A DNA stretch of 64,000 nt from Gekko japonicus (GCF_001447785.1 NW_015172593.1:298811-362810); one strand, 5' to 3'; numbered from the stretch's first letter, positions 7,315 through 60,400 are shown. The notes: generated by a model not told the origin, from the letters alone. Numbers and translations: made by a program.

Positions 7315-10300
7315 CTGGGGGAAAGAGAAAAAGAAGAAAACCCTGGTTAAGCCAAGAAGCGCATTCACGCAAAATGTATTTTCACCTGCCCAGAACCCCT
7401 TCCAGCACCCCCCCCCCACCCTCCAAGGGCAAAATAAGTACAAGTTATACGATCCTAATGCCATCTCTCCCTTAACATACACCACAGCTCTTGTGCTTTC
7501 ATTGCTGGAGGCAGGACAATTGAGGCAGCAGCAATGCCTTCCTACGCAGAGTTCGACGCTTTTAAGCTGAATGAAGACTTGGAGTAACTCTGCTTAAGAC
7601 GGCACCCTTAGATTATATTACACGGAACGCTTCAAGACTCCAACCAATGGCTCCCTCTAAGCTGTGGAGTCTTGTGAGCAAAAATTCTACTTGGTGAGCT
7701 ACTGGCATCACAGTTGTCAGCAAGCGATTTGGCTGCTGCATAAATTAGTTTGCTCTGAAGCCATCCTTCCCGAGCTAAGACAAAAATGTGTGAGACAGAG
7801 GCTAAAAAACTGTGAGCTAGCTCACACTAACTCAGCTTAGAGGGAACACTGATTATATTTGATTCCCACCACAAGCTTTGTTAGAACGAGTCCAAATGCA
7901 TTCATTCAGAAAAGTCTATAGCTTGTTACTACAACTCCTTTCCCTCAATTCTTTTTATCATTGCAAGTCCTTCTCTTAGTGCCGTCACCCATAGAAGTAA
8001 GGTGAATAGTAATCACGGACAGAGCTTTCTAAGTAGCAGTTGCCCCAGTTGTTGGAACATCTTTCCCAATGCAGGCTGACTGGTAACTATTTTACTGGCT
8101 TTTAATTTAAACACAAAGGGAAACATTCCTCTTCACCCATCCTTTCAGCTAGCTGACATCTTTCTGGGATTTTCATACCACTCTCTATGGCTAGCCTTCT
8201 GTTTACAAACAACTTTTATATTGCTGGTTTTACTGACTGTTTTCACTGCTGCGAGTTTTAGTGTCTGGATCTTAAAAAATTATTTGAAATTAACCATATT
8301 ATTGTTTTATCATCGCTGTTAGCCACTTCCAGCAAGATTTTTAGAAATGCAGGATAGAAATATTCTAAGTAAAATAATACTGACCCTAAAGGATAAGATG
8401 TGCAATACTGACTTCTGGCTATACCCAATATATTTCACCATTAAGCCAGAGTTCAGAGATATAGATAATATTGCAGCACAAAGGCCCTTAATGGCTCCAA
8501 AATACTTAGATAGCTAGCTGAGTCACCTAATTTCAATGGGAAAAGGTCTCCTTTTTTATTTACAAATAATTCTGGCCACACCAGCCCCTGGTACTAAATA
8601 GTCTTCCTTCTACATAAGATGCTGGCAGTCTGATGACCTGTCTACTCATTTCCTGCAAGCCACCAGTGAATTCCAGCACATCATTTGGGCATCACTTCTG
8701 TAATACTTCGATTGGCTTACATTCTTGAGGAACTCCTCAGCCACAATGCGAGCCCTGGCATTGACAGACAACTTCATCTCGCTGATTTCCTTGTCGATTT
8801 CCTCCATGAAGTGAATGACAAAGTCCACCAGCTTGTGCTTGTACATCTGTTCTGTATGGAAGTTTGTGATCAGGAAGCTGATGTCATAGCCCTGAAACAT
8901 AAGAAGAGCAGTGAGAGATTAGCATACGGTCAGCTGAGACAGACCCATCATTCCTTCTGTTGGCTCTTATAATCTACTCACCACTGGCAGAAAAAAATCA
9001 GAAGCCCTAAAATTGTTTATTAATAATCTAGAATAATGGTTCTCTATCTCCAGAAGTAGTAATACCTCAAGATAACTGCAGCTATGTTTGGGGTTTCTGG
9101 AACAGCGACATCTGGAAGCCAGACTGTACTAACCACAGCATCAATACACCCAAGTATTCATTTACTAAATGGTGTATTGCCTACATGGAGAGACACTGAA
9201 AAGAATCAGGAAATAGACATGGCACATTGGGTTTGATCCCAAGCCCTTCCGGTTGTGTGACTCCCACATCACCAATCTGACGGTGGCTACCTTCCATTAT
9301 TCTGAGAGTATGTGAGCTTCCCTGTAAACAAACTCAGAACCCAAGGGGAGGGTGTTTAGACTGGAATTCAGTCACCAAGCCCCACCTGGGACCCGAGTAT
9401 TCCAAGGGGGTTGCAATGCTACAATCTGAGACATGGTGAAGGGTCAAGCTAATTCCTAGCTATTGTCATGGCTGGAAATAGAATATAAGAGGAGCCCCGC
9501 TGGCCCACACCAAGGGTCCATCCAAGCTCTGATCCAACAGAGCCCAATAACAGGAGACTGGATTTATACCCCGCCCTTCAGTCGGAGCACCTTACAATCT
9601 CCTTCCCTTCCTCTCCCCACAACAAACACCCTGGGAGGTAGGTGGGGCTGAGAGAGGTCTCAGAGAACTGCTGTTGAGAGAACAGCTCTGAGAGAACTGT
9701 GACTGACCCAAGGTCACCCAGCACCTGCAATATAGAAGAGTGGGGAATCAAACCCAGTTCTCCAGATTAGAGTCTGCTGCTCTTAACTACTACACCAAAC
9801 TGGTGTAAGACGCTTGCAGGAAGCCCATGAGCAGGACATGGGAAGCAGACCTCCCCTGCTGCTGCTCCCTATGACTGGTATCCAGTTGCATATTTCCTTT
9901 GAATGTGGAGATTCCACAAAGCCATTATGGGTTAAAAGCTGTTTGTAGACCTAGACCATGGCTTTCTCAACCCCCTTTGAAAACCATCTAAACTAGGGTA
10001 CATTACCCTATCCTGTGGAAGAAAGTAAATATTGCTAAACAAACATTATATGAGGAAGTATTCTGTATGTTTAGCATTAGTATTCCTCAAATCAGCCAGT
10101 GCAAAGATAAAAAGTACATACAAACATTCTTTAGCCAGTCAGCAATAAATGTCACTTGTGACCTTAAGCAAATCAGCACCTCGCACAGAGCCAAGACCCT
10201 GGTCAGCAATGTTCCCTCTAAGCTGTGGAATCTTGTGAGCAAGAATTCTACTTTGTGAGCTCCTGGCATTAAAGTTGTGAGCAAGCTATTTGGCTACTGC

Positions 10301-13300
10301 ATAAATCAGTTTGCTCTGGAGCCATCCTTCCTGAGCTAAGACAAAAACGTGTGAGCTGGAGGCTAAAAAACTGTGAGCTAGCTCACACTAACTCAGCTTA
10401 GAGGGAACACCGCTGGTCAGGTCACCTCAACTCACCTCAACAGGTTTCCGACGTAAAATGAAGAAGTTCTCCGCTCTCATCATCATGAAGCGCATGAACT
10501 TGTGACACAGGATCTTCTCAATCTCATCTGCCTGCAGAACCAGAAAAGGAAGCCCTTCAGCATTTCCACCAAGGTAAGCTGGAGTGACTATCCCAACCCC
10601 TTTTTCTCTTGGGCTCTGCTTACCTGCTTCACTGCAATGCTGACTCGCACAGAGTTGATAGACCCTTCAATCAGGACTTTCTCTTTCTCATTTCGGCTGA
10701 TGATCACAGGCTGCAACAACAGCTCCTTGCTGCTTCTGCAAAGCCACAAAGAGACATACATTTGTATCAAAGAGGCACAGTGCACACTCCGGTACAAAAT
10801 CATCCAGATTTCTCCCCATATGCATGCATCTGACATACACACAGTATAAGCCTATATTCAGCTTTCAGGAGGCCCCCCCCCATTCAGAAGCATTTTTACA
10901 AGTCTTGGAGTAAGGGGAACAATTGTGTAATTTCCTCAGCCCTTAGATTTTGTAGAACACATAAGACCTGCAGATTACATGAGGGGTATCTCCTCACCCG
11001 CACCAGTTGCTGTATGGCAACTTATTTATGAGTGGTTTGTTGTGAGGGAAGTGGGGAGAGAAGACAAGAGGATCTGATGTGCAGGAGGCAGCCCAGAAGC
11101 CATATGTCATCTATCCCTGCCCCAAAGACAAAGTATAGGAGCGATTAATTCAGTTACTTGATCAAGAACATTCCAGTAACATGACTAAATGGGCACAGCC
11201 TGAATAAATTCTTAAGATTTTGCATAAAGCCAGAAAATAGCACATTAAAAATGCCATTCAGTTCTATGGGTTGGATTCTGATCTCCTAATGTTAAAGGAG
11301 CCTCAATCATAATTTGGAATCCAATAGGTTTAGCATGATTACATTATACTGCAAGCTGTGAAATCTGGCAAGGACTACTTAAAGGAGTCGCATGCATCAT
11401 CTGGAACCCAACACACACGTATTGTTTACAGCAGCTCTAGAGACTATAGTCTGGGGATTGTGTTTCTCCTAAAATAAGATTAATTTGGCAAGAACTTCCT
11501 ATATGATTTAGACACTTTGTATGGGATATTTAGGCACTGCGGTGGCTCAAGTGGTTAAGACGCTGAACTGCAGGCTGTGGAAGGTCAGTAGTTCAGCAGT
11601 TCGAGACCCGAGTGGCCGCACAATGGGGTGAGCTCCCGTCTCTAGTTCCAGCTCCTGCCAACCTAGCAGTTCGAAAGCAAGAAATTGCAAGTAGATAAAT
11701 AGGTACCACTTTGGTGGGAAGGTAACAGCGTTTGGTGCGCCTTGGTGTTTAGTCATGCCGGCCACATGACCACGGAAACGTCTTCGGACAGCGCTGGCTC
11801 TTCGGCTTTGAAACGGAGATAAACACCACAACCCTAGAGTCAGACTCGACTGGCTTTCGAGCAAGGGAACCTTTACCTTTATGGGATATTTATTATGCTG
11901 AATATATGGAACATTCATTTATGCACCATGTTGTATTTATAGGTTATTTATATATTATTATAATATTTATATTTTTATATTATTTAATTTAGTAATGTAT
12001 GGATTATTAGTTATTCACATGGACTCTTTTATATCTTGGAAAATATTTAACAAATACTCCCTTCTGGATGCCACACAGCTTCACGTCTTCCTTGAACAAC
12101 CCAACCTGGATATTTTAAAAACCACATTTGCCCAGAGAAACCTACCTACACACTTTGGGGAGTCCTTTCTGTGTCCGCATCACCCTCTGAGGTGTGGAAA
12201 CATGAGAAAGAGTTTTTGTTTTGCTTTTAAATAGAGGCACATAACCGTTGGAGCTCTTTCCTCAAGAAGACCAGGCTTTCTCGGGAGGTAGTGGGCTCTT
12301 CTTCTTTGGAGGTTTTTAAACAGAGGCTAGAATGGATGTTAATGGATGGCCATCCGTCCTCTGCCCCTGACATTCTGGCTGAGGCTCCGGCGGCTGTGGT
12401 TGGACGGGTGCGGCAGAGCTGGTTGAAGCTTAATCCATCGAAGACGGAGGTCCTGTACCTGGGTCAGGGGGGAGTGGATGTGGGTATCAGACTCCCCATG
12501 CTGGAAAGGGCACCTTTGGTGCCGGCCCAGAAAGTGAGGAGCCTAGGAGTAACACTGGATGCCTCCCTGTCCATGGAGGCCCAGGTTACTGCAGTCGCCA
12601 GATCTGCATTTTTCCATCTTAGGCAGATTAGGTTCCTGAAAAAAAAGGGGGGACGCGGGGGGGGGGGGATTTGTGAATTTCCTGCATTATGCAGGGGGAT
12701 GGACTTTATGACCCTGGAGGTCCCTTCCAGCTCTATGATTCTAAAACGTACCTTAGCCTTCTTATAACAGGTCAAGGTGGTATTACTTAACACACCTTTA
12801 ACCAGGGTAACACTTAATGATTATAGGCTTCTGGTCTGACTTGTTAGTGCAGTGGTTGAACTAGGATTTGGGAGATCCAGGTTCAAAACCCCACTCTGAC
12901 ATGCAAGCTGGCTGTGTGACCGCGGACCACCCACACTCTTGTAGCCTATAGCCTACCTAACAGGGCTGTTGGGAGGATAAAATGAAGGTGGGGAGAATGA
13001 GCTGCTTTGGGTCCCCACTGGGAAGAAAGGGGGCTATAAACATCTGAATACTGATATGTGGGTTCTGCTGCTGTTTTTGATCTGATTGGTTACCATGTTC
13101 CCTCTTAATGTTTGTTTTTCCCCTACTGAGTGGAGCAGTTCACATCCTGAGCAGAATATAACTGCTGTAATCTTAAAATGTAAAGTACATTATAAATCTA
13201 CTAACAGAAAAGTCCACAGAGACCTATTCCAATGCTGTAGACTGATAAGAGACTGATGGAGGTTGCAGCAGTCATAAATGATAAGAGATGCAGCCGGCTG

Positions 13301-16300
13301 TTACATTCGCCACAAAAAGTGATTCAGCAAGCATCAAAGGAAGCATGAGAGATGCAGCAGGCAGTTATATTTTCCACACAAAGTGATACAGCAAACATCA
13401 GAGCAAGCAACACGCCTCCTAGGCAAAAACTGTGTGTTTTGACAGATTCTTCTTCAGGCAGATATATTTTTCCTGGAACCAAAGCTCACAATCTTACAGT
13501 GCATAAGTCAACAATTCTATAGAAGGCTTCTCCAGTTCAATTTTTGCCTAGGAGGTATGTTGCTTGCTTTGATAAGAATAAGCTGCTTTGGTTTCCCACC
13601 GGGTGAAAAGGCACAGTATAACTGAAGTATATAAAATAAAATAGGGGCCCACGTTCTTTGCTCTTGGGCGGGAGGTACAGAGCAGGGCCTCCAAGTTATT
13701 TAATTGGCAAATAGGTTCAAACAGGAACATTCAGCCTTTCAGCTGTTATGGATCCTTAGCTGCAATGAATGTCCTGCTAGGATTGTGCTGCAAACTAGAG
13801 AGGAGGTTCCTCAGCCTGGCAACAGAAGCCATGTTCTTTCAGCAGCAGGCTAATCAGCCTGTGCTTCCTTTGTACACATACAGCTGCACCCTTAGCTCAC
13901 ACAAGATTGTGTAGGCAGTAGAAAAAGGGAATGATCATACAGCTGATCTCAGTCCCTGTGTTTGCAAATAGGAGGGGCAACCCACTCTACAACTCCCTGC
14001 ATACCTATGCGACCCAACAGATAATTTTTTTTTGCAATCAAATCATAGATGACTTATGGCAACCCCATAGGATTTTCAAGAAAAGAGACATTCAAAGGTG
14101 GTGTGCCATTGCTTGTCTCTGCATAGCAACCCTGACTTCCTTGGCGGTCTCTTATCCAAATACTAACTAGGGCCAACCCTGCTTAACTTTTGAGATCTGA
14201 TGAGATTGGGCTATCCCGGGCTATCCAGGTCAGCGTGCAATAATATATATTTTTAAAGTAGCACAGCAAAATCCCAGTTCTCACCCTTGCCCATTTGAGG
14301 TGACCTAAAACACATTTGTGGATCACAGTATATTAGTCATGATTAAATGTTGAGATTACTAATTTGGTTCACAGTACAGACCCTCTTTATAACTCTGTGC
14401 TTGCTATGCCCAGGGTGCAACAATACTTACACTAGGGCAGGCATGGCCAAACTGAAGCTCAAATGGCCACCAAATGAGAAGGGACCACTCACTGGAGAAG
14501 TCCCTCATGCTGGGAAAGACTGATGGCAACAGAAGAAGGGGATGGCAAAGGATGAGATGGTTACACAGTGTTATCAATGCAACGAACTTGAAATTAAGCA
14601 AACTCCGGAGGACAGTGGAGGACAGGAGGGCCTGGCGTGATGTTGTCCATGGGGTCGTGAAGACTTGGACTCAACTGTGCGACTGAACAACAACAACAAC
14701 AAAAGAAATGCCTGGAAGCAGAAAATTAGCGTTTGTAGTTAGATAAGAATCCTACGTCCCTATTCAGCCCTAGGGGATCCATTGTTCTGAACTTGTGAAT
14801 TAACTCAAATTCAGCAATTTCACCATTGTAATTTCTCCTTGATTTTTGTTTGTTTGTTTGATGACTGTCAGTTTTAGGTCAGCAATGGGCCTCGAAGACT
14901 AAAATGTTCTCCCACTGCTTTTTGAGTGTTGTGGTTTTTAATGTCAGATTTATGTCTGCTTATTTTTTTGCGTGGGGACTGTCCTTTTTGTCTGATGTAG
15001 AGAGTGGAAATCCATTGCTGGCATTGGATGGCATATATAACATTGCAAAAGGAACAAGTGAATGAACCTGAGATGGCCTGGCTGGTGTTGTTAGGTCCGG
15101 TGAGTGTGTTGTCAGAGTGGCTATGGGGACAGAGCTGGCATCTTGTTTGATGCAGGTACCAAAGCCCGTGTCCCAGGACATTTGGCATGCCAAGCAGACA
15201 CCACACCACTATGCCACAGCCCTTCCACTGAAGTGAAGAGTGTGTTTGCTGAAGCCAGCATTTTGGGGAGGGATGTGCTTGGCTACTCCCGTCTGAGCAA
15301 CTCTGGTTTAGAGCACCCTTTTGGCACCTGAGGCCCAGCCCTCACCGATCTCTCGGTGCACACGCTCCGTCACACTGCGGGCCCCCATGCCCAGCTCTTG
15401 GCCGTAGTATCGCTTGGCAACCTGCCAGATGTGGGTGTCCACGGGGACCGCCTCCGCCTTGTCCAGTGCCATCAGACAGACACAGTCAGCCACCTGCAAA
15501 GGAGGCAAAGAATGTCAGAACAGAATAGCCCTTTGCCACGGTCTATGCTTTTAGGGTCTACATTTTGATGCTGTGGCTGGTTTTGGGGGTTTTTTTACTG
15601 GCTTTTAATTAACAGCTTTTAATGTTTTCTTTTTATGATGTTCTAAGATGCCTCGGGCAGGTTCCCCAAAGAGGCGGCATAACATTTTCCTAAACAAATA
15701 AATACATTCCCCATGGGCACACGGCTCCAATCAGGCCACTGTCTACAACCCCTGCTCTCAACTCACCACCACTGTTGTTATTCTTGCCCCACTGCTACAA
15801 ATATCAACCACCATCTCTGACCTCCCTCCTTAGCCCTTGTATGAAGTGGTCTGGAAGGGAGGCAAACCACTGGCTAGGCTAGCCTTGCCCCGCCCTTTTT
15901 ACGCTGGCCGGAAATAGTTCTCCAAGGTCTCGAGCTGGGAAGCCTCCCCTGACAACTGTTACACAAGATCCTTCATATTTACGCATTTATCTACATTATT
16001 TGGAGTCCGACTTTCTCACAGGGACTCCAGGCAGGTACCTCATTGTGAGTTAGTGCAATCAACAAAATGGGACCAATGCATTTCGATATATGGAGTCCGG
16101 AGCCACCAGGAAGAAGAAGAAGAAGAAGAGATTGGATTTATACCCCGCCCTTCGCTACCCACAGGAGTCTCAGAGTGGCTTATGAACTCCTTTCCCTTCC
16201 CCTCCCCACAACAGACACCCTGTGAGGTAGGCGGGGCTGAGAGAGCTCTTGACAGAAACTGCTCTTTTTCAAGAACAGCTGTCCCAGAACTATGGCTTGC

Positions 16301-19300
16301 TCAAGGTCATCCAGCAGGTGCAAGTGGAGGAGTGGGGAATTGAACCTGGTTCTCCCAGATTAGAGTCCGCACACTTAACCACTACACCAAACTGAAGCAT
16401 AGCATAAGCAATGCTCCCTCTAAGCTGTGGAGTGCTACTGCATAAATTAGTTTGCTCTGGAGCCATCCCTTCCTGAGCTAAGGCAAAAAATGTGTGAGCT
16501 GGAAGCTAAAAAACTGTGAGCTAGCTCACACTAAACTCAGCTTAGAGGGAACACTGAGCACAAGTATTACCTGCACAGAAAAGCCCTCCTGGATAGTTCA
16601 GTTTTGCATCATTTGCCGAAGGCCAGTGGAGAGCAGGGGGGTTTCCTGACCTCTTTAGACAGGCCTTTCCACAAGGTGGGAGCCACAACAGAGAACGCGC
16701 GGGTACAGGCAGTTGCTGGTTTTGCCCACTTGCAGGTTGCCCCTGCTGGCTCAAGCAAAGTTGTTGCGGCGGAGCATTGGGAAAGAGACAGTCCCACACA
16801 TAAGAGGGGCCAAGGCCATGAAGGGCTTTGTATGTGACAGCCGATACATTAAGCTGAGCCTGGTGACAGACGGGCAGCCAATGGAGCGTCTGCAGAATGG
16901 GAGTAATGGGCATGCTTTGTCTAGCTCCGGTTAATAGCCGAGCTGTGGCGTTCTAGACCAGCTGGAGTTTCTGAGTCAATTTTGAGGGGAGACCAATGTA
17001 CAGTGCATTGTAGTACTCTGGCCTTGATGTCCCCATGGCATGGATCCGGGTGGCCAGATCAGCTGTATCAAGGTAAGGGGCCATCTTGTGGGCTAGGCTG
17101 AGTTAGTACAAAGCCTTTTTTGCAGCTGCATTAACCTGTTTCTCCCGTAATAAGGCTGGATCCAGTATGACCCCAAGGCTTTTAACAGAGTCAGCAAGGG
17201 TCAGTTGAACTCCATCAAACGTGGGGAGAATACTGTCCTTCAAGACCTCCTCTTTTCCAACCTGCAGTACCTCTGTCTTTTCAGGGTTTAGTTCCAATCT
17301 GTTCACTTTTAGCCAGTTAACCACTGTGGCCAAGCAGCTATTTAGGACCTCTACCCCATCACCAGGAGATTTGGACAAGAATAAGGCTATATACAGCTGA
17401 GTGTCATCTACACAGTTGTAACTGGAATTACCAGCAATTGAATTTCAGACGTTCTGAAACGTAGGTTGCCAGAGGTTACGTTTATCTCCCCCTGGCGTGT
17501 TTCCCATTTCAATTCCCACTGAGCTGCACAGAACGTCTTGTTACAAGCCCTCCCCGCTTTAGTTATTGTGGCAGCGGGAACACTCACCTAGGCAGAGAGT
17601 TCCACCAGGTTGGAGCCAAAGACACAATGCTCCAGACCCAAGTAACAGCCACCAAGGGTCAGTTTCTTTTCAGTCACTCCAGTTGGGTATCAATGCAAGA
17701 ATCAAGGGGCCAGCAGCTGGCCTGCACACATGACAATCATTTGGTTTTTTAATCGTTTGCTTGTGCGGAGGCAATAAGCACAATTCCATCATGTCACCTT
17801 TTGAAATAAGTCAGACTGCAGGGGTAGAGATAATGCTACCACAGTTCAGTGTATCAAAATCAACAGTGAAAGAGAATCATATAAAATCATAAAGTTGGAA
17901 GGGACCTCCAGGGTCATCTAGTCCACCCCCTGTACAATGCAGAAAATTCACAACTATTTCCCCCCCACACACTCCCAGTGACCCCTGCTCCATGCCCAAA
18001 AGGTGGCAAAAAAAAGGTACTCCCCCAAAACACCCAAAAAAACCCCCTCCATCATCCCTGGTTAAACTGACCTGGAGAAAACTGTTTCCTGACCCCGAAG
18101 TGGAGTCACAGAAAGTGGAGACACAGAAAGATATACAGGAACGGTACAGGGGGAGCAATTTTGATAACATGAATATTATCATGGAGATCAGGAGAGTCAG
18201 GCTGGTTACATGCCAGGATGTAGAGTTTCATGTCTACCACACACCAAGACAAAGTGATGGAAGGAGGAAGAGACCAGGTAAAGAACCAAGAAGAGATAAG
18301 AGAACAGAACTACAAGGTGAGCTGCAGCAGGAGCATGAAGAGCTGCAGATGAAAAGGAGGCATTCAGTGTACATGTGACATTCTGTGTACTCCTCTTTGA
18401 ATCATGCTCTATATAAAGTGCTATGAGCTGGAGAAATAAGCAGAAACAGAAGCTATCAAAGGATATTTGTGATGGGGCAACTGGGAATGAACAGAGCAAA
18501 AAGAGGGAACACAAAGTGAAAAAAGCTATGGAAGGCCTGAAGAGATGCCATGGTCACATGGGAATCCAAAGGGAAACCTTATTTTGCTAACAGTTTATAA
18601 TATTTTCAGAATGAGATCTCAAAGCAGGGAACAATACTAAACACGAATATACAGATTAAAATCCAGAAGATGAAACCTAAATCCAAGACAGTGTGAAATG
18701 ATGACCACAATCAGAATACCACCACCATCTCTCCACCGCCAGACGTCATTTCATTCTGGAACCAGCTATAGTTAGGAGATCTGGCACATTTGGCTCCCAT
18801 AGCAACAACCATGCCTTTTCATTCATTCTCCCATGACTTCCCTTTTCTATTCTGCTACTTCCTTGTGCTTTTCTACTTCCCACTGTGCTGCTTCAGCTCG
18901 CTTCAGAAATGAAACACAAGTACATTTTTATAAGAGCCAGTTGCATCTATCAACCATTAGTTATAAGCTCAGTATGTTAATCCTCTGTGTGCACCAAACA
19001 TTATTTCCAAAGACAGTTCATCTACTTGAGAAGGAGCTAAAAGCTGCCAGCGAGACATGCCCTTCTCCCCATAAAACTCATACAGTCTTATACTCCTCCA
19101 ACCCTTCACCTCTTTGTACCTGACTTCCACCTCGGGCTTGTTGTGCCGCTCCACCACCTGGGATGAGAAGTTCTCCAGGCACAGGGCAGCCTGCAAGGTA
19201 GCACGAACTGCATTGAGATAGGGGCGCAAGGTGGCAGTCTGTAAGGAAGGAGGCAAAACCATGAGGCACCAAAGAAACTAGAGAGTCCTAAAAGAGGCCT

Positions 19301-21269: not shown

Positions 21270-21476
21270 ATGTCTGAGCTGAAGGACTGCCCCCTTCAGT
21301 TCCATGACTTTAAGTCTGTGGACCATCTGAAGGTATGCCCACGTTACACAGCCGTGCTGGCCCGTTCAGAGGATGATGGCATCGGCATTGAAGAACTTGA
21401 TACGCTGCAGCTGGAGCTGGAAACACTGCTGTCTTCTGCTAGTCGCCGACTCCGGGTGTTGGAGGCTGAAACTCAG
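21270..21476 (+). CDS. TADA3: TADA3 first coding exon
   Basis: MSELKDCPLQF...LEAETQ; Kozak caccATG; donor gtcaga. Confidence 0.97.
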
Positions 21477-24400
21477 GTCAGAGGATAATCCCATGGAATG
21501 GAGATGCTTTCAGTTATGGCCCAAAATACAGGTGTTGGTCTCTGCAAAAGTCAAGCACCTTTTTTTCCTCCAGATCACATCTCCGCATGGTTGGTATGAA
21601 GGCTTTTAAGGCAGATTCCACAGCCTGTGTGGTCCTCTGGTCAGTTTTGTGGTCAGCTGGGTACCATATGAGGCTGAAGAGTTACTTCATAGACTAGATG
21701 CAATGTATGGGAGACTCTGGCCTGTGAAGTTATGCTCTTGTATTGCCTCTGGAGCACATTGCTTCTTAGGCAGCCGAAGTACAGCAATACTGCAACCTCT
21801 TACTCCATTCCTGCCGATTTGCTTTTGGTTCATTATATTACCATGGACAGAGCCACACTTTGCATGCAAACGAAGCCTGCAGAGAAGGCATCAGAGTGAC
21901 TACTGAGATGCTGATGGTTTGATTTAGCCTGCTCCTTGGTGAGCTGATGATGTGATGCTACCATCCTAAACATACCTAACCCTGAATATTCTCTTGGAAT
22001 CAGTATTTTAACATCTGAGTAAATGGGTTTCAGACTGAAGTGTTTCAGTCAGTGTGCTGTTGCAAGTAGCGGCCCACCCTCCTAACCAGTATGAGAAAGC
22101 TGGGTGATGAAGGTGAATCATATGAGACCGTGCGTTTATCCCAAATGAGCAAAAATGGCATCATCCCTGCTGCCCATGAACCCCGTTCCGGCCCTCTGAG
22201 GCATCATCCCGAATCTCCATCTGGCAACATGCCACTCTCCCAAGTCCACCTTGGAGGGGTTTCCTCTCACTTCTCTTTAGGTACATTGAAGCCAGCCAGT
22301 CGGCTTTGGAAATTCTCGACAAAAGGGCCAGCAACACCCCTATTTTCCCTTTCGGGTCGCTGTTTTAAGTCTCTGCCCTAGTACCCGAGTCTTCTGCTAC
22401 TCAACTGGTTACTGTGGGGACAGCTTTACTGCTTTTGTGCACTCCCTGGGGAAATAACCAGCACCCCCACTTGCCTCCCTTTCCTGGCACCTGTTTTAGA
22501 TAGTCCGTTTGAATCGTGGAGATCTATGTGGTGTGGATATCAACTACCAGCATTTAAAGTTGATAAGGATTTGTTGAAAAAAGGGAAGTTGACATACATA
22601 CTCTGTAGAGCAACAGGGCATACTCTTGTCTCTCCGCCTACATATGCCCTAGCTAGTTTTGTTCTGTTTAAACTTAAAAGGTGTGGCATCCTAAAGCTTC
22701 CTACTACCTTGGAGTCTTCGTCTAGGCTGCCTGCCCTTTGTCTTTTCCACATGGCAATGGTGGCTATCAAGATGGAGCCTAGATGTGAGAGCTTCTTCCT
22801 CCAGATGAAATCAGCCATAAAGGACTCCATTCCCTCTGTGCCAAGGAAATTTATATCCTGTGTCTGCGCACGCACACACACCAAAGATAGGTCAAATCTT
22901 CCCTTCCTGAGGTCTCCAGGAAGATACAATGTAGACGTCTACATCCCATGTCTTTGTCATTATTAAGTGTCAGATTCTAGCTAAGGTGTGAGCTGTCCAG
23001 TTTCATTGTTTTCTGCTGGGAGAGCCGTTTGTGTTTATAAAGCTTTGATGGTTGTGTACTTGACAACAGTTGACAGAGTGAGCGACACTTGGGAGCAATC
23101 AACTTCCACTTCTTACCTGTCTTTGCCAAAAACAAACTAACCCCTTTTAAAGTCAAGTGTGGGATATTGCAAGCCCCAAATCAGGAGACATTGGGATGTA
23201 ACCCCTAAGAAAAGAACATTTCTCCACAAAAGGCTTATCTCCTTCACCACCCTATCCCCCATACTCTTCCCCATTAAAAAAAAAATCCCATGGTGGTTTC
23301 CATGTTATCTGCAGAAGTGAGGCAGGATTCACAAAAGTTCACGTTGAAATAAATGTGGTTAGTCTTTAGGGTGGTCTTGGAGCTCTGTTTTATTTTGGAT
23401 GGCATCCTAGCCCCTATACCAGGATCAGAACTACTCAGGAATCCATGCAAGGCTGTACTCTGCAAACGGAACTCAAACCACAAGACTCAGAGTCTTACTT
23501 CACTGGGTGACATTGGGCTAGTCTTTTTCTCTCTTGGCCTAGCTTACCTGACAGGGTGGTGTTTATGAGCGTAAAATGAAGAGAAAGTTGATGGTGTAAG
23601 CCAGTGTTGCTTCTAAGCTGAGTTAGTGTGAGCTAGCTCACAGTTTTTTTAGTCTCCGGCTCACACAGGAAGGAGGGCTCCAGAGCAAACTAATGTATGC
23701 AGTAGCCAAATCGCTTGCTCACCACTTTAATGCCAGTAGCTCACAGAGCAGAATTTTTGCTCACAGGACTCCACAGCTTAGAGGGAGCCCTGGTGTAAGC
23801 TGCTATGAGCCCCTATTGCAAGGCATAAATAAATAAATTTGGACCAAGCATAGGGGCATGTAATGTTTTATAATGGATATCTTACCTAGCTGCTGGACAA
23901 GTAGGGATATTGCTTCAGATTTACGATTCCCAAAGGCTGAAGTTGGTTTTCCTTGAGGAGGACTCATTCGGACACCACCCTGTTACCTGTGTTGTGTGTG
24001 TGTACATGCACATTTTTTGGCCATAAAGCATAATCCTGCATTTCTGTTTTCTCCACAGCCTCTGCCCTCATCTCTCATTCAACGTTACACGAGCTGATAG
24101 CACCATTGCACAACATCAAGATGTATCATTTTGGTGTAGTGTAGAATATTGGACTAGGATCCAGGTTCAGATTTTACTCTTAATGCTCCCTCTAAGCTGT
24201 GGAGTCTTGTGAGCAAAAATTCCACTTTGTGAGCTACCGGCATTCAAGTTGTGAGCGAGTGATTTGGCTGCTGCATCAATTAGTTTGCTCTGGAGCCCTC
24301 CTTCTTGAGCTAAGAGAAAAATGTCTTAGCCGGAGGCTAAAAAGACTGTGAGCTAGCTCACACTAACTCAGCTTAGAGGGAGCACTGCTTACTCTTGACA

Positions 24401-27400
24401 TGGAAGCTCACTGGGTGACCTTGGGCCAGTCCCTCCCTCTCAGCTTAACCTACCTCACCGGGGTTGTGAAGAGAAAAGGATGGAGAAGAGAGTGATGGAA
24501 GCCACTTTGGGTTCCTGTTGGGGGGGAAAGTTGAAGCCAAAATAAAGTAAATACTGTCGGTGATGATCTCACCCTGCTTGGGGAAGCCTGTACTAACACA
24601 CCCAAACATGGCTTCTTTTCTCCTGCTCCGAGGGGGGTGATATTATGAAAGAGAAGCCCAGCACCAAAATCACCAGGGCTGCTGCACTCTTGAAGTGGTG
24701 GTCCCTGGCGGGCTTTTCAAACACAGATTCCCGCCCCCATCCAGATCCTGACAGACTGGCAAGACAAGAAAGGGGACAGGCGATTTCTGAAGCTGGGCAA
24801 GGAACATGAGTTGGGTACTCCTATCAAGCATGGCAAGCCCAAGAAGCAGAAGCTGGACGGGAAAGGAGGCCACAGCACAGGACAGGGCCCCGGTCGGCCC
24901 AAATCCAAAAACCTGCAGCCAAAACTCCAAGAGTATGAATTCCCAGATGACCCGATCGATGTGCCACGCATTCCCAAGAACGATGCACCAAATAGGTATG
25001 GGGGAGTGAGATTTGCATGACTTTGTAATATCAGTAATGATTCTTGGCTACATAGATGGTATTTCAAGTATGTTCTCTTGGGAGTCTTTCATAGAGGAGC
25101 TTTTCTTGCTGTGGGGGGTTATCTTCAGCATGATTTCATCTCTCGGAGGTGTTTCCTGGTTCTCCTGGATCGGCTTGGCCTTGTGGGTCTGACTTCCACT
25201 TCCACTGTGCCTGTGGGTGGGGACGAGAGAGGGGACCGATCAAGTGGTCTCTTTCCTCAGCCTTTTCCTCGCCAGCCACCTGCAAGCCCGGCCGTGTGTT
25301 CCCTTTCAAAGGGCCTGGTCTGGGGCTGTGGAGCCATCACCTGTGGTCCTCTAACAGCATTCTCATGTCTCATCTGCAACTGTTGGGGATGATCAGACAG
25401 GTGCACCGCTGCTTGGTTTCAGGGGCAATAGGGCTCCACATATAACCAGTTTGCTCTGTTGCTCTCTAAGTTCCCTGGGTGTGGATGGAGTTTGGAAATG
25501 GAGGATTCACAAACCGTTGTGCAAAAAAGCATCGCAGAAAAGAACTCCGGGATGCTGCCGCATGACCTCCTTGATCATCCTTGTGGAACTAAAAGCAAGG
25601 AGCGGATTCCTGTTAGTGAAGTGCTTTTGGACAGTGAGAAGTGATATGTTTTCTCATGGCTAACCCTTAGAGAGGAGTTGCTGCCACTGGTCCTGTAAGT
25701 GCAGCTACAATATACCCTTCCATTACCTGGAGCAACATGGGATGCCCGGCAGCCCTCTAAGGAATACAGGCCGCCCTCCATCTGGAACCCATGTGCCAGA
25801 ATTGTGATTCTTTCATGTTTTGAATTGCGTTTGTAGGTTCTGGGCCTCAGTGGAGCCGTATTGCTCAGACCTCACCAGTGAGGAGGTGCGTACTTTGGAA
25901 GAGCTCCTCAAGCCTCCAGAAGATGAAGCTGAACACTACAAGGTAAAAAGCCCCATGATCTGTTTGTTTGTTTGCATTCCTTTGATCCTGTTCTCTTTCC
26001 AAGGAGCTCAGGGTGACATACATTAGCCAGTTTGGTGTAGTGGTTAAGTGCGGGGACTCTAATCTGGGAGAACCGGGTTTGATTCCCCACTCCTCCACTT
26101 GCACCTGGCTGGATGACCTTGGGCAAGCCATAGTTCTGTCAGAGCTGTCCTTGAAAAAAGAGCAGTTTCTGTCAGAGCTCTCTCAGCCTCATCTACCTCA
26201 TAGGGTGTCTGTTGTGGGGAGGAGAAGGGAAAGGAGTTTGTAAGCCGCTCTGAGACTCCGAGTGAAGGGCGGGGTATAAATCGAATCTCTCCTCCTCCTC
26301 CTCCTCCTCCTCCTTTCGATCCCTTGCAAGGGGAAGGGAAAGGAGTTTGGAAGCTGCTCTGAGACTCCGAGTGAAGGGCGGGGTATAAATCGAATCTCTC
26401 CTCTTCCTCCTTTTGATCCCTTGCAAGGTGGTTTGAGCTGAGAGTGAAAGACTGACCCAAGGGCACCCAGTAAGTTTCACGGCAAGTGACCATGTGAACT
26501 GGGTCTCCCTTGCCCGAGTCGTCCAGCACTCTAAGCTGCTCCACACTGGCTCTCCTGTTTACGCCCTGTTCTTGCTTGAGTCTCTGGCTTCCCACCCTAT
26601 AGCACTGGGTCACTACTAGCGTCATTTACTTGGGCCTGAGATGCCCTCTCCACCAGACAACCTGTGACAGAGCTCCAGGAGTATTAGGCCATGGGCTGTA
26701 TTGCCCACTGAGCCGCCAGTGCTGTAAAGCATGGATTGCAGGCTAAGCTGTAGTCCCCAGGTAGTATGTTCCCTGCCTTTAAAACTCCTTTAAAGTTTCC
26801 TGCAATGCAGAATGTGGCAGCAGCTGTTCTGTTGCCCCCTGATAGAGCGGAAAACCCATTTTGCGGAACACCCATGTTGGCAGGCACAGCCCAAAGAGCC
26901 ATCTTGTATCATGAAAAACCTCTCAGTTGGAAAAGAAGATTTCCCACCCACTTTATTAGGCCCTGATCCTGTTGTCCACCCTTCCTTTTGCTGGGGGGGG
27001 GGGTTTGCAGCAGTAGGCTGGAAGTGGAGCCACAGGAATGGGCAGGGGTGGGAGAAGCTGTCGTCCCCTTTACATTTACAGCTGTAGGGCTGTTGAGAGA
27101 AACAAGAGCAGCTCTCTGCCTTGTAGCCTGGCAATGCTACCGCCTCGGCTTCTTAAAGCATTTCCTTAGATGCCACAACTCCAACTCGTTTAAGCCGCCA
27201 CCTTCTGCATTTTAGCCAGTTCAAACAAGTCCTCATGTTCAAAGGTAAATCTCACTAATTTCTATGAGAGTGACCCTCTTCAGAGTTCCAGCCTGCCAAT
27301 ACTTGCCTCGAGGTGTTTGCTTGCTGGGGCAATCCAGAGTGGGTGCAGATCATGAGTACGGGACATTAGCATATTGTTTATATTGTATGCGTGCCGCTGG

Positions 27401-30400
27401 TAGCAGTGGCCCTGTGAAAAACATACGTAAGAAGAGCCCTGCCGGATCTGACCAGTGGTCCATCAAATCCAGCCTCCTGCTTCAAACAGAGGCCAAGGCT
27501 GTCTCTGGACATTGCCTTCTAGCTCTGACAGTCAGAGGTTGGCTGCCTCTGAACATGGAGGTTCCCTTTAGTTGCCATGACTGTTATCCATTGGGCACAT
27601 TACAGACACACAGACATGTGCGAGTGAGGGGAGGAGAATGAGCTGCTGCTGCCTCCGCACCCATTTTGTACTTACATAGCATAGAGCCAGTTTGGTGTAG
27701 TGGTTAAGTGTGCGGACTCTAATCTGGGAGAACCGGGTTTGATTCCCCACTCCTCCACTTGCACCTGCTGATGTGACCTTGGGTCAGTCACAAGCTCTGG
27801 CACAGCTGTCCTTGAAAAAGAGCAGTTTGTGTCAGAGTTCTCTCAGCCCCACCCACCTCACAGGGTGTCTGTTGTGGGGAGGGGAAGGGAAAGGAGTTTG
27901 TAAGCCGCTCTGAGACTCCAAGTGAAGGGCGGGGTATAAATCCAATCTCTTCTTCTTCTCTTCTTCTTCTTCTGGTCCCGCTGATCAGAATGTGGAATAT
28001 CTTGGAATAGGTTCAGTATGAAGAACAACTAAAACGCAATCTTAAGGAGAGTTGCACCCTTCGAAACCCATTGATTTGAAAAAAAAAAAATAGAATAAAA
28101 ACAAGTCCTACATATTGGCCGTGAGTGTGTTCCTGGGCGTGGCCATGTGGCTTCTGGAAACCTCCTCCAGCTGGCGGGCTGACCCCTTCCATTGGACCTG
28201 TGGAATAATGGAGTCATTTCCTCTTCCTCAGCCCAGGGAGTCATTTCCTCTTCCTCAGCCCACCCTCCCATCTGTTCTTGATGCTCTGAGTGACCCGGAA
28301 GACAATGGCTCAGTCAAAGGTGTTGGGGACACAGCTAGAGCAGGGGAGTCTGCTGTTTGGAAGTGGGGGTGGGTACCTCAGTTCCACATGATGTGGGTCA
28401 GATCATTTGGGGAAAGTGATGAGCTGAAAGGGAGTTGAGGATGTTGGGGAAAACTCAGCTGGGAGAGAGAGAAGGAAATGGTTCAGTGATGGTACAGCCG
28501 GATCTGGGCTTGCAGGAGAACAGTGATACGAGCTTGGCCAGAGGGGGCAAGGTGGACCTGGACTTTGTGTTTTCCCGGACTGTTGGCTGCTTCAGGTCGG
28601 TCCTGGAGTCCTCACGTTACTCATCTCACCTGTGGATCCTTGTCTTACAGATCCCACCCTTGGGGAAGCACTACTCTCAGCGCTGGGCCCAGGAAGACAT
28701 GTTAGAAGAGCAGAAAGACGGAGCTCGGGCTGCAGCTGCCGCCGATAAGAAAAAAGGCATCTTGGGGCCGCTGACGGAGCTGGACACGAAAGGTCTTTTG
28801 AGCAGTTTGGTGGAATCTCTTGCGGATAGGGAAGAGGGTGTATAAAGGAGCATACCGGCTCATCCACTGCTGTGGTTGTGTGTTCCGTGCCAGACATCTG
28901 TTCCAGTCTCCCCCTCCCCCTTTAAAGTCACTTATCCAGTCTGAAGGCTGGGGCTCAAGGGCTGGATTGGAGGCACTGTCACTTCACATTAAGGCCTGGA
29001 CTGACTCGGTAGATTTTTTCTCTCGTGGACCTCAGGATACATCCAAGGTTTTGCTTGTTTTGCCTCGGTGGAATGTGGTAGGAAGCTACAGTTGCCAAAT
29101 CTGGGTTGAGAAATTCTTGGAGATTTTTTTGGGGGAGGGTAGTCTAAGGAGGCTGGAGTTTGGGGAGGGGGAAGGATCTCAGCAGGGTATAAGTTCACAG
29201 CGTCCACCCTCTGAAGCAGCCATTTTCTCCAGGGGAGCTGACCTCTGTAGTCTGGTGCTAGTTGAGATTCTGGGAAGTCTCCAGGGCCCACCTGGAGATT
29301 GGCAAAGTCCAAAACTCTTTCCCCCCCTGCAGTGTGTGTGTGTGTGTTTGGGTGGACTTCTGCAGTGTACTCCCTGCTGTTGTCCTTTGTGTGTGGCTCA
29401 AGCCGTCTCAGCCCAGGCAAGCCCCCGATCTCATCAAATCTCGGACGCTAAGCAGGGCCAGCCCTGGCAAATATTTGGATGGGAGACCTCCAGAGAACAC
29501 CAGGGCCGGGAGGCAGAGGCAGGCTATCAAGCCACTTCTCTGAACATCCTCCATGCCCCAGTAGGAGTCGCCAGAGGTCGCCATGACTTCCAGGCATGCA
29601 CAGAGTGCAAAAATACCCCCCAAACCCATCTCAGCCAGCACCCTCACTGCTCCTTCATTCCCTCCGCTCCAGATGTCGATGCTCTGCTGAAGAAGTCGGA
29701 GTCCCAACATGAACAGCCTGAGGATGGCTGCCCGTTCGGCCCTCTGACCCAGCGTCTCCTGCAGGCCCTCGTTGAGGTAAGTAGAACCAAATCCCAGTTA
29801 CCCCTTTCTTTAGCTGCAGCTGGTCAGGGTCTCCGGCAGGCAAGAAGCTAAGCTCCTGCTCTCTCTCTCTCTCTGCCCTCCAACCGTAGGAGAACATCAT
29901 CTCCCCCATCGAAGACTCGCCGATTCCAGAGATGGCCGGCAAGGATTCTGCAGGGGATGGTGCCAGCACTTCGCCTCGCAGCCAGAACAAGCCCTTCAGG
30001 TGAGCATCAGCCAGAGTGTTGCTTTCTATGGGGGAGTGGGTGCCAGGAAGATGTGGGGCTCCAAAGGCAGTATTGTGGTGCTGTAGCTCATGCTGTCTCT
30101 TCTGAGTGACCAGGGAAACGCAGAATGGTTTGTTGTGTTCACGGATGAAGTTTTACACGTAAGTGCAGAAATTGGCTGTGCCACAGAATTCAGCCTCTCG
30201 ACCGTCAAAACCAAAACACGCCAAGTTTCCAACTCTGAAGATCAGGAAGATAAGCCCACTTGTTTGAGGGCAATGCCTGGTAAAATATCAGTAGTTGAGG
30301 AGGGTCAGCAGGATTTCCAGTGGCCGGGAGATGAGGCCTCTGTGGTTTGCAGAAGCAAAAATAAATTAGGCAGAATAAGCCAGCGCAAGTGGGAACTTGC

Positions 30401-32135
30401 GGGGGGGGGGGGGGGGTTTGTTTCTACAACTCCAAGATCTCTCTCTTGCTCAGTCTCTGCCAGTTCAGATGAGGCCTCTGTGGTTTGCAGAAGCAAAAAT
30501 AAATTAGGCAGAATAAGCCAGCGCAAGTAGGAACTTGCAAGGGGGGGGCCGTTTTGTTCCTTTGCCCTCTTCTTCCCCTTACCATAATGGAGCCAATGGG
30601 TATGGGGAAGAAGAAATTTCTCTGAGCCTCATCTTCCCCCTCTGACACGCGGTGGCTTCCGAGAGAAAGTAGCCATTCATTCCAAGAGCGATTGCTATAG
30701 GGAGGGAATTGGACTTGGAGGGAAGAGAGCACAGACACCAAAGACAATGTTGTCCCTAGGCTCAGTCTCTTCCCCCCACCCATCACTCCCTGCCCAAACT
30801 CTTCCCACCTCTGATGTAGCCACAGCAGCAGGGAATGCAAGAAGCCAGCCAGTGGGGTGTCCAGCCGGTAGGCACCATATTCTAAGAGGTCTTGCGCTGC
30901 AGCAGCAGGCAACCCGTTTGTTCAGCTTGGGAGCTCCTCGCACTGGCTGATGGGGAAAGGGAATGCACGTCTCCTCTTGACTAGATAATTCCCAGCTCTC
31001 TTGTGAAATTAGAACAAATGCCTGTTTGGGCCCTCCAATGAGAGGGGTGTTCCTCGATGGCTCAAGGGATGCATGCGTTCATGTGGTATTGAGGAAGGGA
31101 AGCGGCAGGGACTGTTGTGCTTTTGTTTGCAAGGGAATGCAGGCTCTCCTCTTCTGGCAGAGATCCACTGTTCTCCCTCCTGTCCCCCATTTAGGTACCC
31201 ATGATGATAATCTGCACGCAAACAGCTTGATTTACGAGTTGACATAGGCAGCTTTGTTTAACGTAGACAGGTTGTGCCTGCCAAAATCTGAAAACTACAA
31301 AGTCTGGTTACCATACAAGTTTTGACGTTGTTGAGTGTGTTGTTGTTGTTGTTGTTTTTGTTCCTCCTATTAAAGTGCAGAGAAAACAGCTCTTGGGGAG
31401 CCGATGTTGAGATCTAGTAATTTGTCCAGAGCTCATTCAGTGAGTTCAGGGATCTGAACTCTGAAGTCAAGAGTCCATTTTGTTTTCCATGGGAGAACAC
31501 TGGCGCTCAGGATGGGTGGTCTTTCGGCTCTCATCGGACGCCTCCTCATGGGTGCTGCTCCTCCTCTCTCCTCTCCAGCGTGCCCCACACCAAGTCCCTG
31601 GAGGGCCGCATCAAGGAGGAGCTGGTTGCTCAAGGCCTGCTGGAGTCGGAGGACCGGCCTGCCGAAGACTCGGAGGACGAGGTGTTGGCTGAGCTGCGGA
31701 AGAGGCAAGCTGAGCTTAAGGCCTTGAATGCGCACAACCGAGCCAAGAAACTTGAGCTTCTCAGGTGAGGCCCCCATCCCTTTTGCCACCTGGAGACCAA
31801 TGACTTTGGCCGCCGCCCTCTCCTTAGGAGTCGGGACTCGTCATCAGACCTTGGGTGGGGCTGGCCAAGATCGGGAGGCTGAAATGCCAGCGTGGTTGAA
31901 AGCCCCCCAACCTTTTTTTTTTTGTTTGTTTACCCGTTGCAGGCTGGCCAAGGAAGAGCTACATAGGCAGGAGCTGCGGCAGCGGGTGCGGATGGCGGAC
32001 AATGAGGTCATGGACGCCTTCCGCAAGATCATGGCAGCGCGCCAGAAGAAGCGCACGCCGACCAAGAAGGAGAAAGACCAGGCCTGGAAGAGCCTCAAGG
32101 AACGTGAGAGCATCCTTAAGCTGCTCGACGGCTGA
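21270..32135 (+). CDS. TADA3: Transcriptional adaptor 3 (SAGA/ATAC subunit), complete; coding exons 21270-21476, 24745-24995, 25837-25942, 28651-28792, 29673-29776, 29890-29999, 31579-31764, 31943-32135
   Basis: Exons total 1299 nt = 432 aa + stop, phases compatible, all GT-AG; MSELKDCPLQFHDFKSVDHLKVCPRY...KERESILKLLDG*. Confidence 0.98.
23602..23792 (-). mobile_element. hAT-type MITE, same family
   Basis: TSD gtgtaagc; inserted in an older SINE. Confidence 0.85.
24181..24387 (+). mobile_element. hAT-type MITE, same family
   Basis: TSD (t/c)ttactct; inserted in an older SINE. Confidence 0.85.
24745..24995 (+). CDS. TADA3: TADA3 coding exon 2
   Basis: ILTDWQDKKGDRRFLKLGK...RIPKNDAPNR. Confidence 0.96.
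25837..25942 (+). CDS. TADA3: TADA3 coding exon 3
   Basis: FWASVEPYCSDLTSEEVRTLEELLKPPEDEAEHYK. Confidence 0.97.
26025..26412 (+). mobile_element. Squam3-like SINE with tandemly duplicated 3' end
   Basis: A/B-box head; the tail block ...gggcggggtataaatcgaatctctcctc occurs twice. Confidence 0.82.
27683..27972 (+). mobile_element. Squam3-like SINE
   Basis: gagccagtttggtgtagtggttaag head, (TTC)n tail. Confidence 0.85.
28651..28792 (+). CDS. TADA3: TADA3 coding exon 4
   Basis: IPPLGKHYSQRWAQEDMLEEQKDGAR...LTELDTK. Confidence 0.96.
29673..29776 (+). CDS. TADA3: TADA3 coding exon 5
   Basis: DVDALLKKSESQHEQPEDGCPFGPLTQRLLQALVE. Confidence 0.96.
29890..29999 (+). CDS. TADA3: TADA3 coding exon 6
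   Basis: ENIISPIEDSPIPEMAGKDSAGDGASTSPRSQNKPF. Confidence 0.96.
30329..30538 (+). repeat. 72-bp direct repeat (30329-30400 and 30467-30538), each copy followed by a G run
   Basis: agatgaggcctctgtggtttgcagaagc...ggaacttgc occurs twice with 1 mismatch. Confidence 0.9.
31579..31764 (+). CDS. TADA3: TADA3 coding exon 7
   Basis: VPHTKSLEGRIKEELVAQGLLESEDRPAEDSEDEVLAELRKRQAELKALNAHNRAKKLELL. Confidence 0.96.
31943..32135 (+). CDS. TADA3: TADA3 last coding exon
   Basis: LAKEELHRQELRQRVRMADNEVMDAFRKIMAARQKKRTPTKKEKDQAWKSLKERESILKLLDG*. Confidence 0.97.

Positions 32136-49729: not shown

Positions 49730-60400
<10,671 letters not shown>

What the first reader, a model, noticed from the sequence alone, without database searches (positions are those of the whole stretch)
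15346..15493. Orphan, intact OGG1 catalytic exon embedded in ARPC4 intron 2
Seen: a 148-nt minus-strand segment with a polypyrimidine/AG acceptor and GTGAGG donor encodes [30 protein letters not shown]..., with no stops and phase 0 to 1. Known: this is OGG1 exon 5 (HhH-GPD region with the catalytic Asp of PVD and the His two residues later). In human, OGG1 lies beyond CAMK1, which here is more than 48 kb to the right. No other OGG1 exon is visible in the window. Splice sites and flanking intron-like DNA are retained, so this is a genomic or pre-mRNA copy rather than a processed retrogene. Inference: a recent exon-shuffling event placing a DNA-repair catalytic exon into a neighbouring housekeeping gene.
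Basis: partly seen in the sequence, partly recalled or inferred. Interest (0 to 1): 0.85.

Follow-up and report, generated by a model that had tools for sequence, protein, structure and literature searches.

The report
Stray OGG1 exon 5 inside ARPC4
A perfect, stand-alone copy of one exon of the DNA-repair gene OGG1 sits inside an intron of the neighbouring actin-regulator gene ARPC4 in this lizard assembly; it is most likely a young, functionless duplicated gene fragment, or else a misplaced piece of the assembly, and not a productive exon-shuffling event.

Summary
Window 15346-15493 (minus) is a 148-nt open exon with a branch point, a pyrimidine tract, an AG acceptor and a GTGAGG donor. It encodes OGG1 residues 250-299, is identical to the squamate consensus, and is the only OGG1 exon in the 64 kb. 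It lies in sense inside the 8.4-kb intron 2 of ARPC4. The gene order ARPC4(-), TADA3(+), CAMK1(+) puts the real OGG1 beyond the right edge, on the same strand.

- The exon carries Asp268 and His270 but not the nucleophile Lys249, which is the last codon of exon 4.
- The host intron is phase 2 and the exon runs phase 0 to 1, so no in-frame chimera is possible.
- Inclusion in ARPC4 mRNA gives a stop after seven codons, i.e. a poison exon.

Zero amino-acid changes and retained CpGs mean the copy is young (about 3% neutral divergence or less), constrained, or the genome's real exon 5.

My odds:
- Young local duplicate, passenger: about 0.58.
- Assembly misplacement: about 0.22.
- RNA-templated copy: about 0.07.
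- Selected orphan: about 0.08.
- Truly relocated sole exon: about 0.03.

The parent copy, the junctions and splicing remain untested. The scan noted this stretch before (s1-831014).

The parts
15346..15493 (-). OGG1 exon 5 copy: 148 nt, phase 0 to 1. It encodes residues 250-299 of the HhH-GPD domain, including Asp268 and His270. Lys249 is not included.
15494..15518 (-). 3' splice signals: CTGAC branch-point match (15518-15514), pyrimidine tract, cag acceptor (15496-15494).
   Evidence: read from the sequence
15340..15345 (-). 5' splice site gtgagg. The same donor read-through (Gly-Glu-Gly) is seen in other sauropsid exon-5 contigs.
15180..15339 (-). Native-looking OGG1 intron 5 flank. It is homologous, with two small frame shifts, to the read-through tail of P0002 down to about 15212.
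   Evidence: frame comparison by eye (inference)
14877..15179 (-). 5'-truncated fragment of a GIY-YIG endonuclease-bearing retroelement (Penelope-like), same orientation as the exon. The block ends at about 14720, against the tail of a plus-strand BovB LINE fragment (14451-14712).
15519..16104 (-). Upstream flank, unique within the window. It includes a repeat-like A-rich stretch at about 15575-15705. It is bounded at 16105 by the (CTT)n tail of a SINE that has 8 copies in the window.
19120..19238 (-). ARPC4 exon 2 (context). It ends ...GTCAG|gtac, which makes intron 2 phase 2.
10624..10735 (-). ARPC4 exon 3 (context). Intron 2 is 19119-10736, 8384 nt.

Best explanation
This is a real but functionless gene fragment. 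A segment of the OGG1 gene was copied at the DNA level from OGG1 into intron 2 of ARPC4. The segment is at least about 0.35 kb and at most about 1.4 kb (window 14.72-16.10 kb). It holds exon 5, its splice signals and short stretches of introns 4 and 5. By synteny, OGG1 lies at least 50 kb upstream on the same strand. The likeliest route is a local replication or repair template switch, which favours nearby donors in cis and can keep orientation. The copy is young, with no more than about 3% neutral divergence since copying, which is why it is still letter-perfect at the protein level and still rich in CpG. It encodes only 49 residues of the HhH-GPD domain, without the Lys249 nucleophile, and cannot make an enzyme. 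It cannot be read in frame with ARPC4. If the spliceosome uses its intact sites, it acts as a cassette 'poison' exon (stop after 7 codons) that sends that fraction of ARPC4 mRNA to nonsense-mediated decay. Shown here: identity, position, isolation, phases and the premature stop. Inferred: the existence of the parent copy, the mechanism, the age and any splicing.
For: - Identity and intactness.
- Only exon 5 is present in 64 kb, although exons 4 and 6 are equally conserved in 28 squamates and would be found easily.
- ARPC4(-), TADA3(+) and CAMK1(+) sit in the order known from human 3p25. OGG1 is therefore expected just beyond the right edge on the minus strand, the strand of the orphan exon. 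Being within roughly 100 kb of the donor and in the same orientation fits a local DNA template switch. A retrocopy inserted in trans would land anywhere in the genome.
- Native splice sites and intron flank are kept.
- Zero amino-acid differences from the squamate consensus. Against P0002 the exon is 42/42 identical while the adjoining intron read-through is only about 65% identical with 2-3 indels.
- CpG observed/expected is 0.68 in the exon against 0.28 in the host intron.
- Phases are incompatible and inclusion gives a premature stop, so there is no coding role in ARPC4.
- Other first-reader notes in this genome list further orphan or duplicated exons. These are unchecked leads only.
Against: - No parent exon 5 was seen: the window ends before OGG1 and no tool could search the rest of the genome.
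- No target-site duplication or microhomology could be defined, because the breakpoints are unknown.
- Perfect conservation and retained CpGs are equally expected if this is the genome's real exon 5 placed wrongly by the assembler.
- The unique block is bounded on both sides by repeat tails with simple-sequence runs, (TTG)n at about 14700 and (CTT)n at about 16120. False joins occur at such places.
- The 281-N run at 55718-55998 splits a SINE at a point where other copies are continuous. The scan's windows also lie on many separate pieces. Both suggest a fragmented, gap-closed assembly.
Confidence: 0.58

Rival explanations
1. Assembly artefact. The block at 14.72-16.10 kb is the genome's only OGG1 exon 5 region. 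It was threaded or gap-closed into ARPC4 intron 2 through the repeats and simple-sequence tails on either side, and the canonical OGG1 locus in the assembly then lacks exon 5.
For: - The exon is identical to the functional consensus and keeps its CpGs, as the real exon would.
- The block is bounded by a BovB/GIY-YIG-element tail with (TTG)n and by a SINE tail with (CTT)n.
- The N-run at 55718-55998 lies inside a SINE whose two sides abut in other copies.
- The scan has 766 windows on 550 pieces.
- The same orientation as the expected OGG1 is what scaffolding errors preserve.
Against: - There are no Ns within 8 kb of the block.
- The repeats at its edges are only 75-88% identical to their other copies in the window.
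- The true locus should be about 60 kb or more away, beyond CAMK1. That is farther than usual small-contig misplacement.
- Both joins would have to be false and seamless.
Confidence: 0.22
2. RNA-templated copy. During reverse transcription of the adjoining GIY-YIG retroelement, or of a LINE, the enzyme switched template to unspliced OGG1 pre-mRNA. This produced a chimeric insertion: an OGG1 intron 4/exon 5/intron 5 piece fused to a 5'-truncated element.
For: - The exon and the truncated GIY-YIG element fragment are adjacent (about 166 nt apart) and in the same orientation.
- Intron sequence is retained, as expected from nascent RNA.
- Other notes in this genome describe exon pieces fused to CR1 LINEs (unchecked).
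Against: - A retrocopy lands anywhere in the genome. Landing within about 100 kb of the donor gene has a chance of order 1 in 10,000.
- No target-site duplication or tail was found.
- Homology to the P0002 contig runs to about 15212, close to the element. The junction may therefore predate a species split at about 15% intron divergence, which a neutral exon would not survive unchanged.
Confidence: 0.07
3. An old orphan exon kept by selection. It could act as a regulated poison exon that tunes ARPC4 output. It could also be a distal exon used by long OGG1 transcripts that read through CAMK1 and TADA3 on the same strand.
For: - Splice signals are perfect and there are no amino-acid changes.
- Against P0002 the exon is 42/42 identical while the flanking intron is about 15% diverged. 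This counts only if P0002 is the orthologous orphan.
- The exon lies on the strand on which OGG1 is transcribed.
- From my own recollection, not checked here: human OGG1 has long isoforms with 3' exons in the CAMK1/TADA3 region.
Against: - Selection for a poison exon would conserve the splice sites and the stop, not the OGG1 reading frame.
- P0002 is far more likely the canonical exon 5 of another species.
- No expression data were obtained.
Confidence: 0.08
4. True relocation. This is the sole, functional exon 5, spliced into OGG1 mRNA across more than 48 kb. OGG1 would then overlap CAMK1, TADA3 and ARPC4.
For: - Same strand as OGG1 is expected to be.
- The exon is perfect.
Against: - Exon 6 is absent from the 15.3 kb downstream, which holds ARPC4 exons 3 to 6.
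- Exons 6 and 7 would then have to lie beyond ARPC4, in the direction where an unchecked first-reader note places TTLL3.
- Several independent rearrangements of an essential repair gene would be needed.
Confidence: 0.03

Closest known systems
Canonical OGG1 exon 5 (HhH-GPD domain of 8-oxoguanine DNA glycosylase)
   Same: - Same boundaries, phases (0 to 1), donor and acceptor.
- The amino-acid sequence is identical to that of Python, Elgaria, Varanus, Eublepharis, Gekko, Heteronotia and Salvator.
- It carries Asp268 and His270.
   Different: - It stands alone. Exons 1-4 and 6-7 are not within 64 kb.
- It lies inside another gene's intron.
- It lacks Lys249, which belongs to exon 4.
Small templated insertions and gene-fragment duplications made by replication or repair template switching (FoSTeS/MMBIR-type events)
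   Same: - A sub-kilobase to kilobase piece of a nearby locus is copied in cis with orientation kept.
- It has no poly(A) and no transposon ends.
- The mechanism is named from general knowledge.
   Different: The breakpoints, microhomology and donor copy were not observed here, so membership is inferred, not shown.
Exon shuffling by LINE 3' transduction or by transposon capture (Pack-type elements, Helitrons)
   Same: An intact exon with its splice sites is placed in sense in a foreign intron, next to mobile-element fragments.
   Different: - No terminal repeats, target-site duplication or poly(A) were found.
- The adjoining element is 5'-truncated and downstream of the exon, not upstream as in 3' transduction.
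- The phases rule out a productive chimera.
Poison (NMD-coupled) cassette exons
   Same: The exon is in sense with strong splice signals, and inclusion gives a premature stop 7 codons in.
   Different: - Known poison exons are conserved for their regulatory function and are seen in RNA.
- Here inclusion is untested, and what is conserved is the OGG1 reading frame.

Membership tests
OGG1 / HhH-GPD glycosylase (as a coding unit) | Significant sequence match to OGG1 over the segment | tested here: met
   E 1.7e-12 to solved OGG1; profile E 8.6e-31; identical to 7 squamates
OGG1 / HhH-GPD glycosylase (as a coding unit) | Catalytic pair Lys249 and Asp268 both encoded | tested here: not met
   Asp268 is present. 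Lys249 is the last residue of exon 4 (...GVG[A/V]K|VADC...), and exon 4 is absent from the window.
OGG1 / HhH-GPD glycosylase (as a coding unit) | Complete domain and complete gene in cis | tested here: not met
   Pfam HhH-GPD scores only 12.7 bits against a cut-off of 26.2. No other OGG1 exon is in the 64 kb.
Processed retrogene or retropseudogene | Intronless copy of spliced mRNA with a poly(A) tail | tested here: not met
   It is a single exon with its own acceptor, donor and intron flanks. It has no neighbouring exon sequence and no poly(A).
Productive exon shuffling | Exon phases compatible with the host intron phase | tested here: not met
   Host intron phase 2; exon phase 0 to 1; a stop follows after 7 codons.
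Poison cassette exon | Premature stop on inclusion | tested here: met
Poison cassette exon | Inclusion seen in RNA | not testable with these tools
Duplicated gene fragment (segmental or templated) | A parent copy elsewhere in the same genome | not testable with these tools
Protein searches found no second same-species copy, but that collection seems not to hold this species' contigs.
Transposon-mediated capture | Terminal repeats and target-site duplication around the captured piece | tested here: inconclusive
   Only short, chance-level repeats were found in 14.4-16.3 kb. The boundaries of the copied piece are unknown.

The most novel reading that the evidence does not exclude
The orphan exon is not a passive fragment. 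It would be maintained by selection in several lizard species, either as a switchable poison exon that couples ARPC4 output to splicing or as a distal exon of long OGG1 read-through transcripts on the same strand. Alternatively, it is one visible product of a genome-wide process in this lineage that scatters intact exons into foreign introns. Several similar unchecked notes exist for this genome.
Probability: 0.08. Interest if true: 0.7.

Novelty: new member of a known kind. Interest (0 to 1): 0.3.

Why it matters
If real, this is a clean natural example of the raw material of exon shuffling: an intact exon with working splice signals dropped in sense into an essential neighbouring gene. It also shows why most such events fail, through phase mismatch and an immediate stop. 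It would predict a measurable nonsense-mediated-decay isoform of ARPC4. If it is an artefact, it flags a class of assembly error (small unique blocks misplaced between repeat tails). That class would also affect the other 'orphan exon' notes in this genome and the OGG1 gene model itself. Either way it does not change what is known about OGG1 or ARPC4 function.

Tried and rejected
One slip: the Rfam scan of the whole window by reference included those 38 bases. It gave no match there.
- Local scripts used the whole window only on the closed machine.
- Weak tblastn hits to the OGG1 N-terminus at 19.13-19.24 kb turned out to be ARPC4 exon 2. Hits at 63.56-63.69 kb and 42.0-42.2 kb are noise (E 0.07-1.2) and did not reappear in the profile search.
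- The search for close-relative contigs of the exon ORF found only P0002, an unnamed 1149-nt contig.
- The search with the intron-plus-retroelement ORF found only one distant element fragment. It therefore did not show whether the P0002 contig shares the element.
- The literature search on OGG1/ARPC4/TADA3/CAMK1 returned only mammalian locus lists.
- The scan's notes hold nothing on the canonical OGG1 locus.
Exons were searched one by one, by reference.

Full report
**What is there**

On the minus strand, 15493-15346 is a 148-nt open segment. It is preceded by a CTGAC branch-point match (15518-15514), a pyrimidine tract and a cag acceptor, and followed by a gtgagg donor. Its 49 codons match solved OGG1 structures at E 1.7e-12. 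In the full-length chain 1ko9_A the match covers residues 250-280, so the PVD aspartate is Asp268 and the histidine two residues on is His270. A profile built from 22 vertebrate OGG1 proteins scores the segment at E 8.6e-31.

**Context**

ARPC4 lies on the minus strand.
- Its start codon is at 19961.
- Exon 2 is 19238-19120 and exon 3 is 10735-10624.
- A further exon lies near 10.43-10.53 kb, and the large C-terminal exon near 8.7-8.9 kb.

TADA3 runs on the plus strand from 21270 to 32132. A CaMKI kinase exon (residues 28-72) is at 59812-59952 on the plus strand. This is the mammalian 3p25 order (OGG1, CAMK1, TADA3, ARPC4; the genes are listed together in the papers, and the exact order is from my own knowledge) seen in reverse. 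OGG1 itself is thus expected beyond the right edge of the window, on the minus strand. That is the strand of the orphan exon, and at least 50 kb upstream of it.

**Is it alone?**

Yes. tblastn with 18 OGG1 proteins, including seven squamate clusters, finds only this exon. A maximum-sensitivity profile search of all 2996 six-frame ORFs gives E 0.45 for the next best hit. Exon 4 (ending ...GVG[A/V]K) and exon 6 (starting NFFRSLWGPY...) are nearly invariant in 28 squamates, so they could not have been missed. Only 317 masked or gap bases are unread. Weak hits at 19.1-19.2 kb are ARPC4 exon 2.

**What kind of copy**

It keeps the native acceptor and donor. The read-through after the donor (Gly-Glu-Gly) is shared by exon-5 contigs of other sauropsids. 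P0002 is an 85-residue ORF on an unnamed 1149-nt public contig. It is identical over the 42 exon residues it covers, then continues into intron sequence homologous to the window down to about 15212. Once two small frame shifts are allowed for, about 65% of the intron-encoded residues agree (my comparison). I take that to mean roughly 15% nucleotide divergence plus indels. The segment is therefore a genomic or pre-mRNA type copy, not a processed retrogene.

From about 15179 downward, the flank is a 5'-truncated fragment of a retroelement with a GIY-YIG endonuclease, in the same orientation. It ends near 14720 against the tail of a plus-strand BovB fragment. Upstream, sequence unique within the window runs to 16105, where the (CTT)n tail of a SINE begins. 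No terminal repeats or target-site duplications stand out.

**What it can and cannot do**

The exon has Asp268 and His270, but the Schiff-base lysine, Lys249, is the last codon of exon 4. 'Catalytic exon' is therefore only half true, and 49 residues of a helical domain cannot fold into an enzyme. ARPC4 intron 2 is phase 2 (exon 2 ends ...GTCAG) and the exon runs from phase 0 to phase 1. Inclusion in ARPC4 mRNA reads ...EVEVR-WLTVSV-stop (computed locally to read the frame, and the joined sequence was not searched). No productive chimera is possible. If spliced, it is a poison exon, which agrees with the scan's other note on this stretch (s1-831014).

**Age or constraint**

The peptide has no difference from the squamate consensus, which itself varies at only 0-2 of 50 positions across geckos, skinks, lacertids, anguimorphs, iguanians and snakes. 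The exon has 10 CpGs (observed/expected 0.68) in an intron with 0.28. With about 100 non-synonymous sites, zero changes bounds any neutral period to about 3% divergence at the 5% level (my estimate). The copy is therefore young, or constrained, or it is the real exon 5.

**Weighing the explanations**

- *True relocation.* This would need exons 6-7 to lie beyond ARPC4, in the direction where an unchecked first-reader note places TTLL3 about 23 kb before the window. I give it about 0.03.
- *Retrocopy in trans.* This would not be expected within about 100 kb of its donor, so the template-switch chimera with the adjoining retroelement gets about 0.07, despite the suggestive same-orientation adjacency.
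- *Local DNA-level duplication or assembly misplacement.* Closeness to the donor and shared orientation fit either one.
  - For misplacement: the block is bounded by repeat tails with simple-sequence runs. The 281-N run at 55718-55998 splits a SINE exactly where other copies are continuous. The scan's 766 windows lie on 550 pieces. All this suggests a fragmented, gap-closed assembly.
  - Against misplacement: there are no Ns within 8 kb. The bordering repeats are only 75-88% identical to their other copies in the window. Two seamless false joins about 60 kb or more from the true site would be needed.
  - I put a real young duplicate at about 0.58 and an artefact at about 0.22.
- *Old, selected orphan.* This is possible only if P0002 is its ortholog, and gets about 0.08.

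Other first-reader notes in this genome describe more orphan or duplicated exons. They are unchecked. They could point to a real lineage-wide process or to a recurrent assembly fault.

**Limits**

The whole-window Rfam scan included them by oversight.
- Species names of the runs are coded. The exon's identity to gecko, anguimorph, tegu and python OGG1 does not fix the species.

**Verdict**

The reading as a recent exon-shuffling event is only partly supported. It is most likely an ordinary, young, non-functional gene-fragment duplication that may act as an accidental poison exon, with a substantial chance of being an assembly misplacement. Interest is modest.

Noticed in passing
window 55718-55998: The 281-N run lies inside a SINE copy. 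The bases on its two sides (...cagctgtc / tttgaaaaagagc...) are adjacent in the intact copy at 16270-16290, so the true gap may be only about 2 nt or a masked insertion. This suggests a scaffolded, gap-estimated assembly.
   Followed up: partly
window 14877-15179 (-): A 5'-truncated retroelement fragment encodes a CxxC/His motif and a GIY-YIG endonuclease domain (Penelope-like). It is 43% identical to one public fragment. The family seems rare in the protein collection: only 10 candidates were found.
   Followed up: partly
window 16434-16556 and at least 13 other places (e.g. 10293-10410, 42264-42383, 42993-43093): A repeat unit of about 120 nt has many copies in the window. Two copies in direct (not inverted) orientation lie at the ends of the stretch that another note calls a Pack-type hAT MITE with captured ARPC4 intron DNA. 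One copy sits in the ARPC4 intron next to exon 4. Part of that 'capture' may be just this shared repeat.
   Followed up: no
proteins P0162-P0166, P0278-P0310: Squamate OGG1 is unusually uniform. The C-terminal 160 residues are 94-98% identical between gecko, lacertid, varanid, tegu, snake and Anolis, against about 75% to turtles. Exon 5 differs at 0-2 positions.
   Followed up: partly
window 29409-29506 (+), 37622-37693 (-), 57741-57804 (+), 60194-60265 (+): There is a 5S-rRNA-like match inside a TADA3 intron and three tRNA-like matches, one of them next to the CAMK1 kinase exon. These are probably SINE heads rather than genes.
   Followed up: no
Erythrolamprus reginae: Two sets of 'N-glycosylase/DNA lyase-like' isoforms are annotated on two different contigs (0.53 Mb and 355 Mb) of one snake assembly. 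This may be a haplotig or a real OGG1 duplicate.
   Followed up: no
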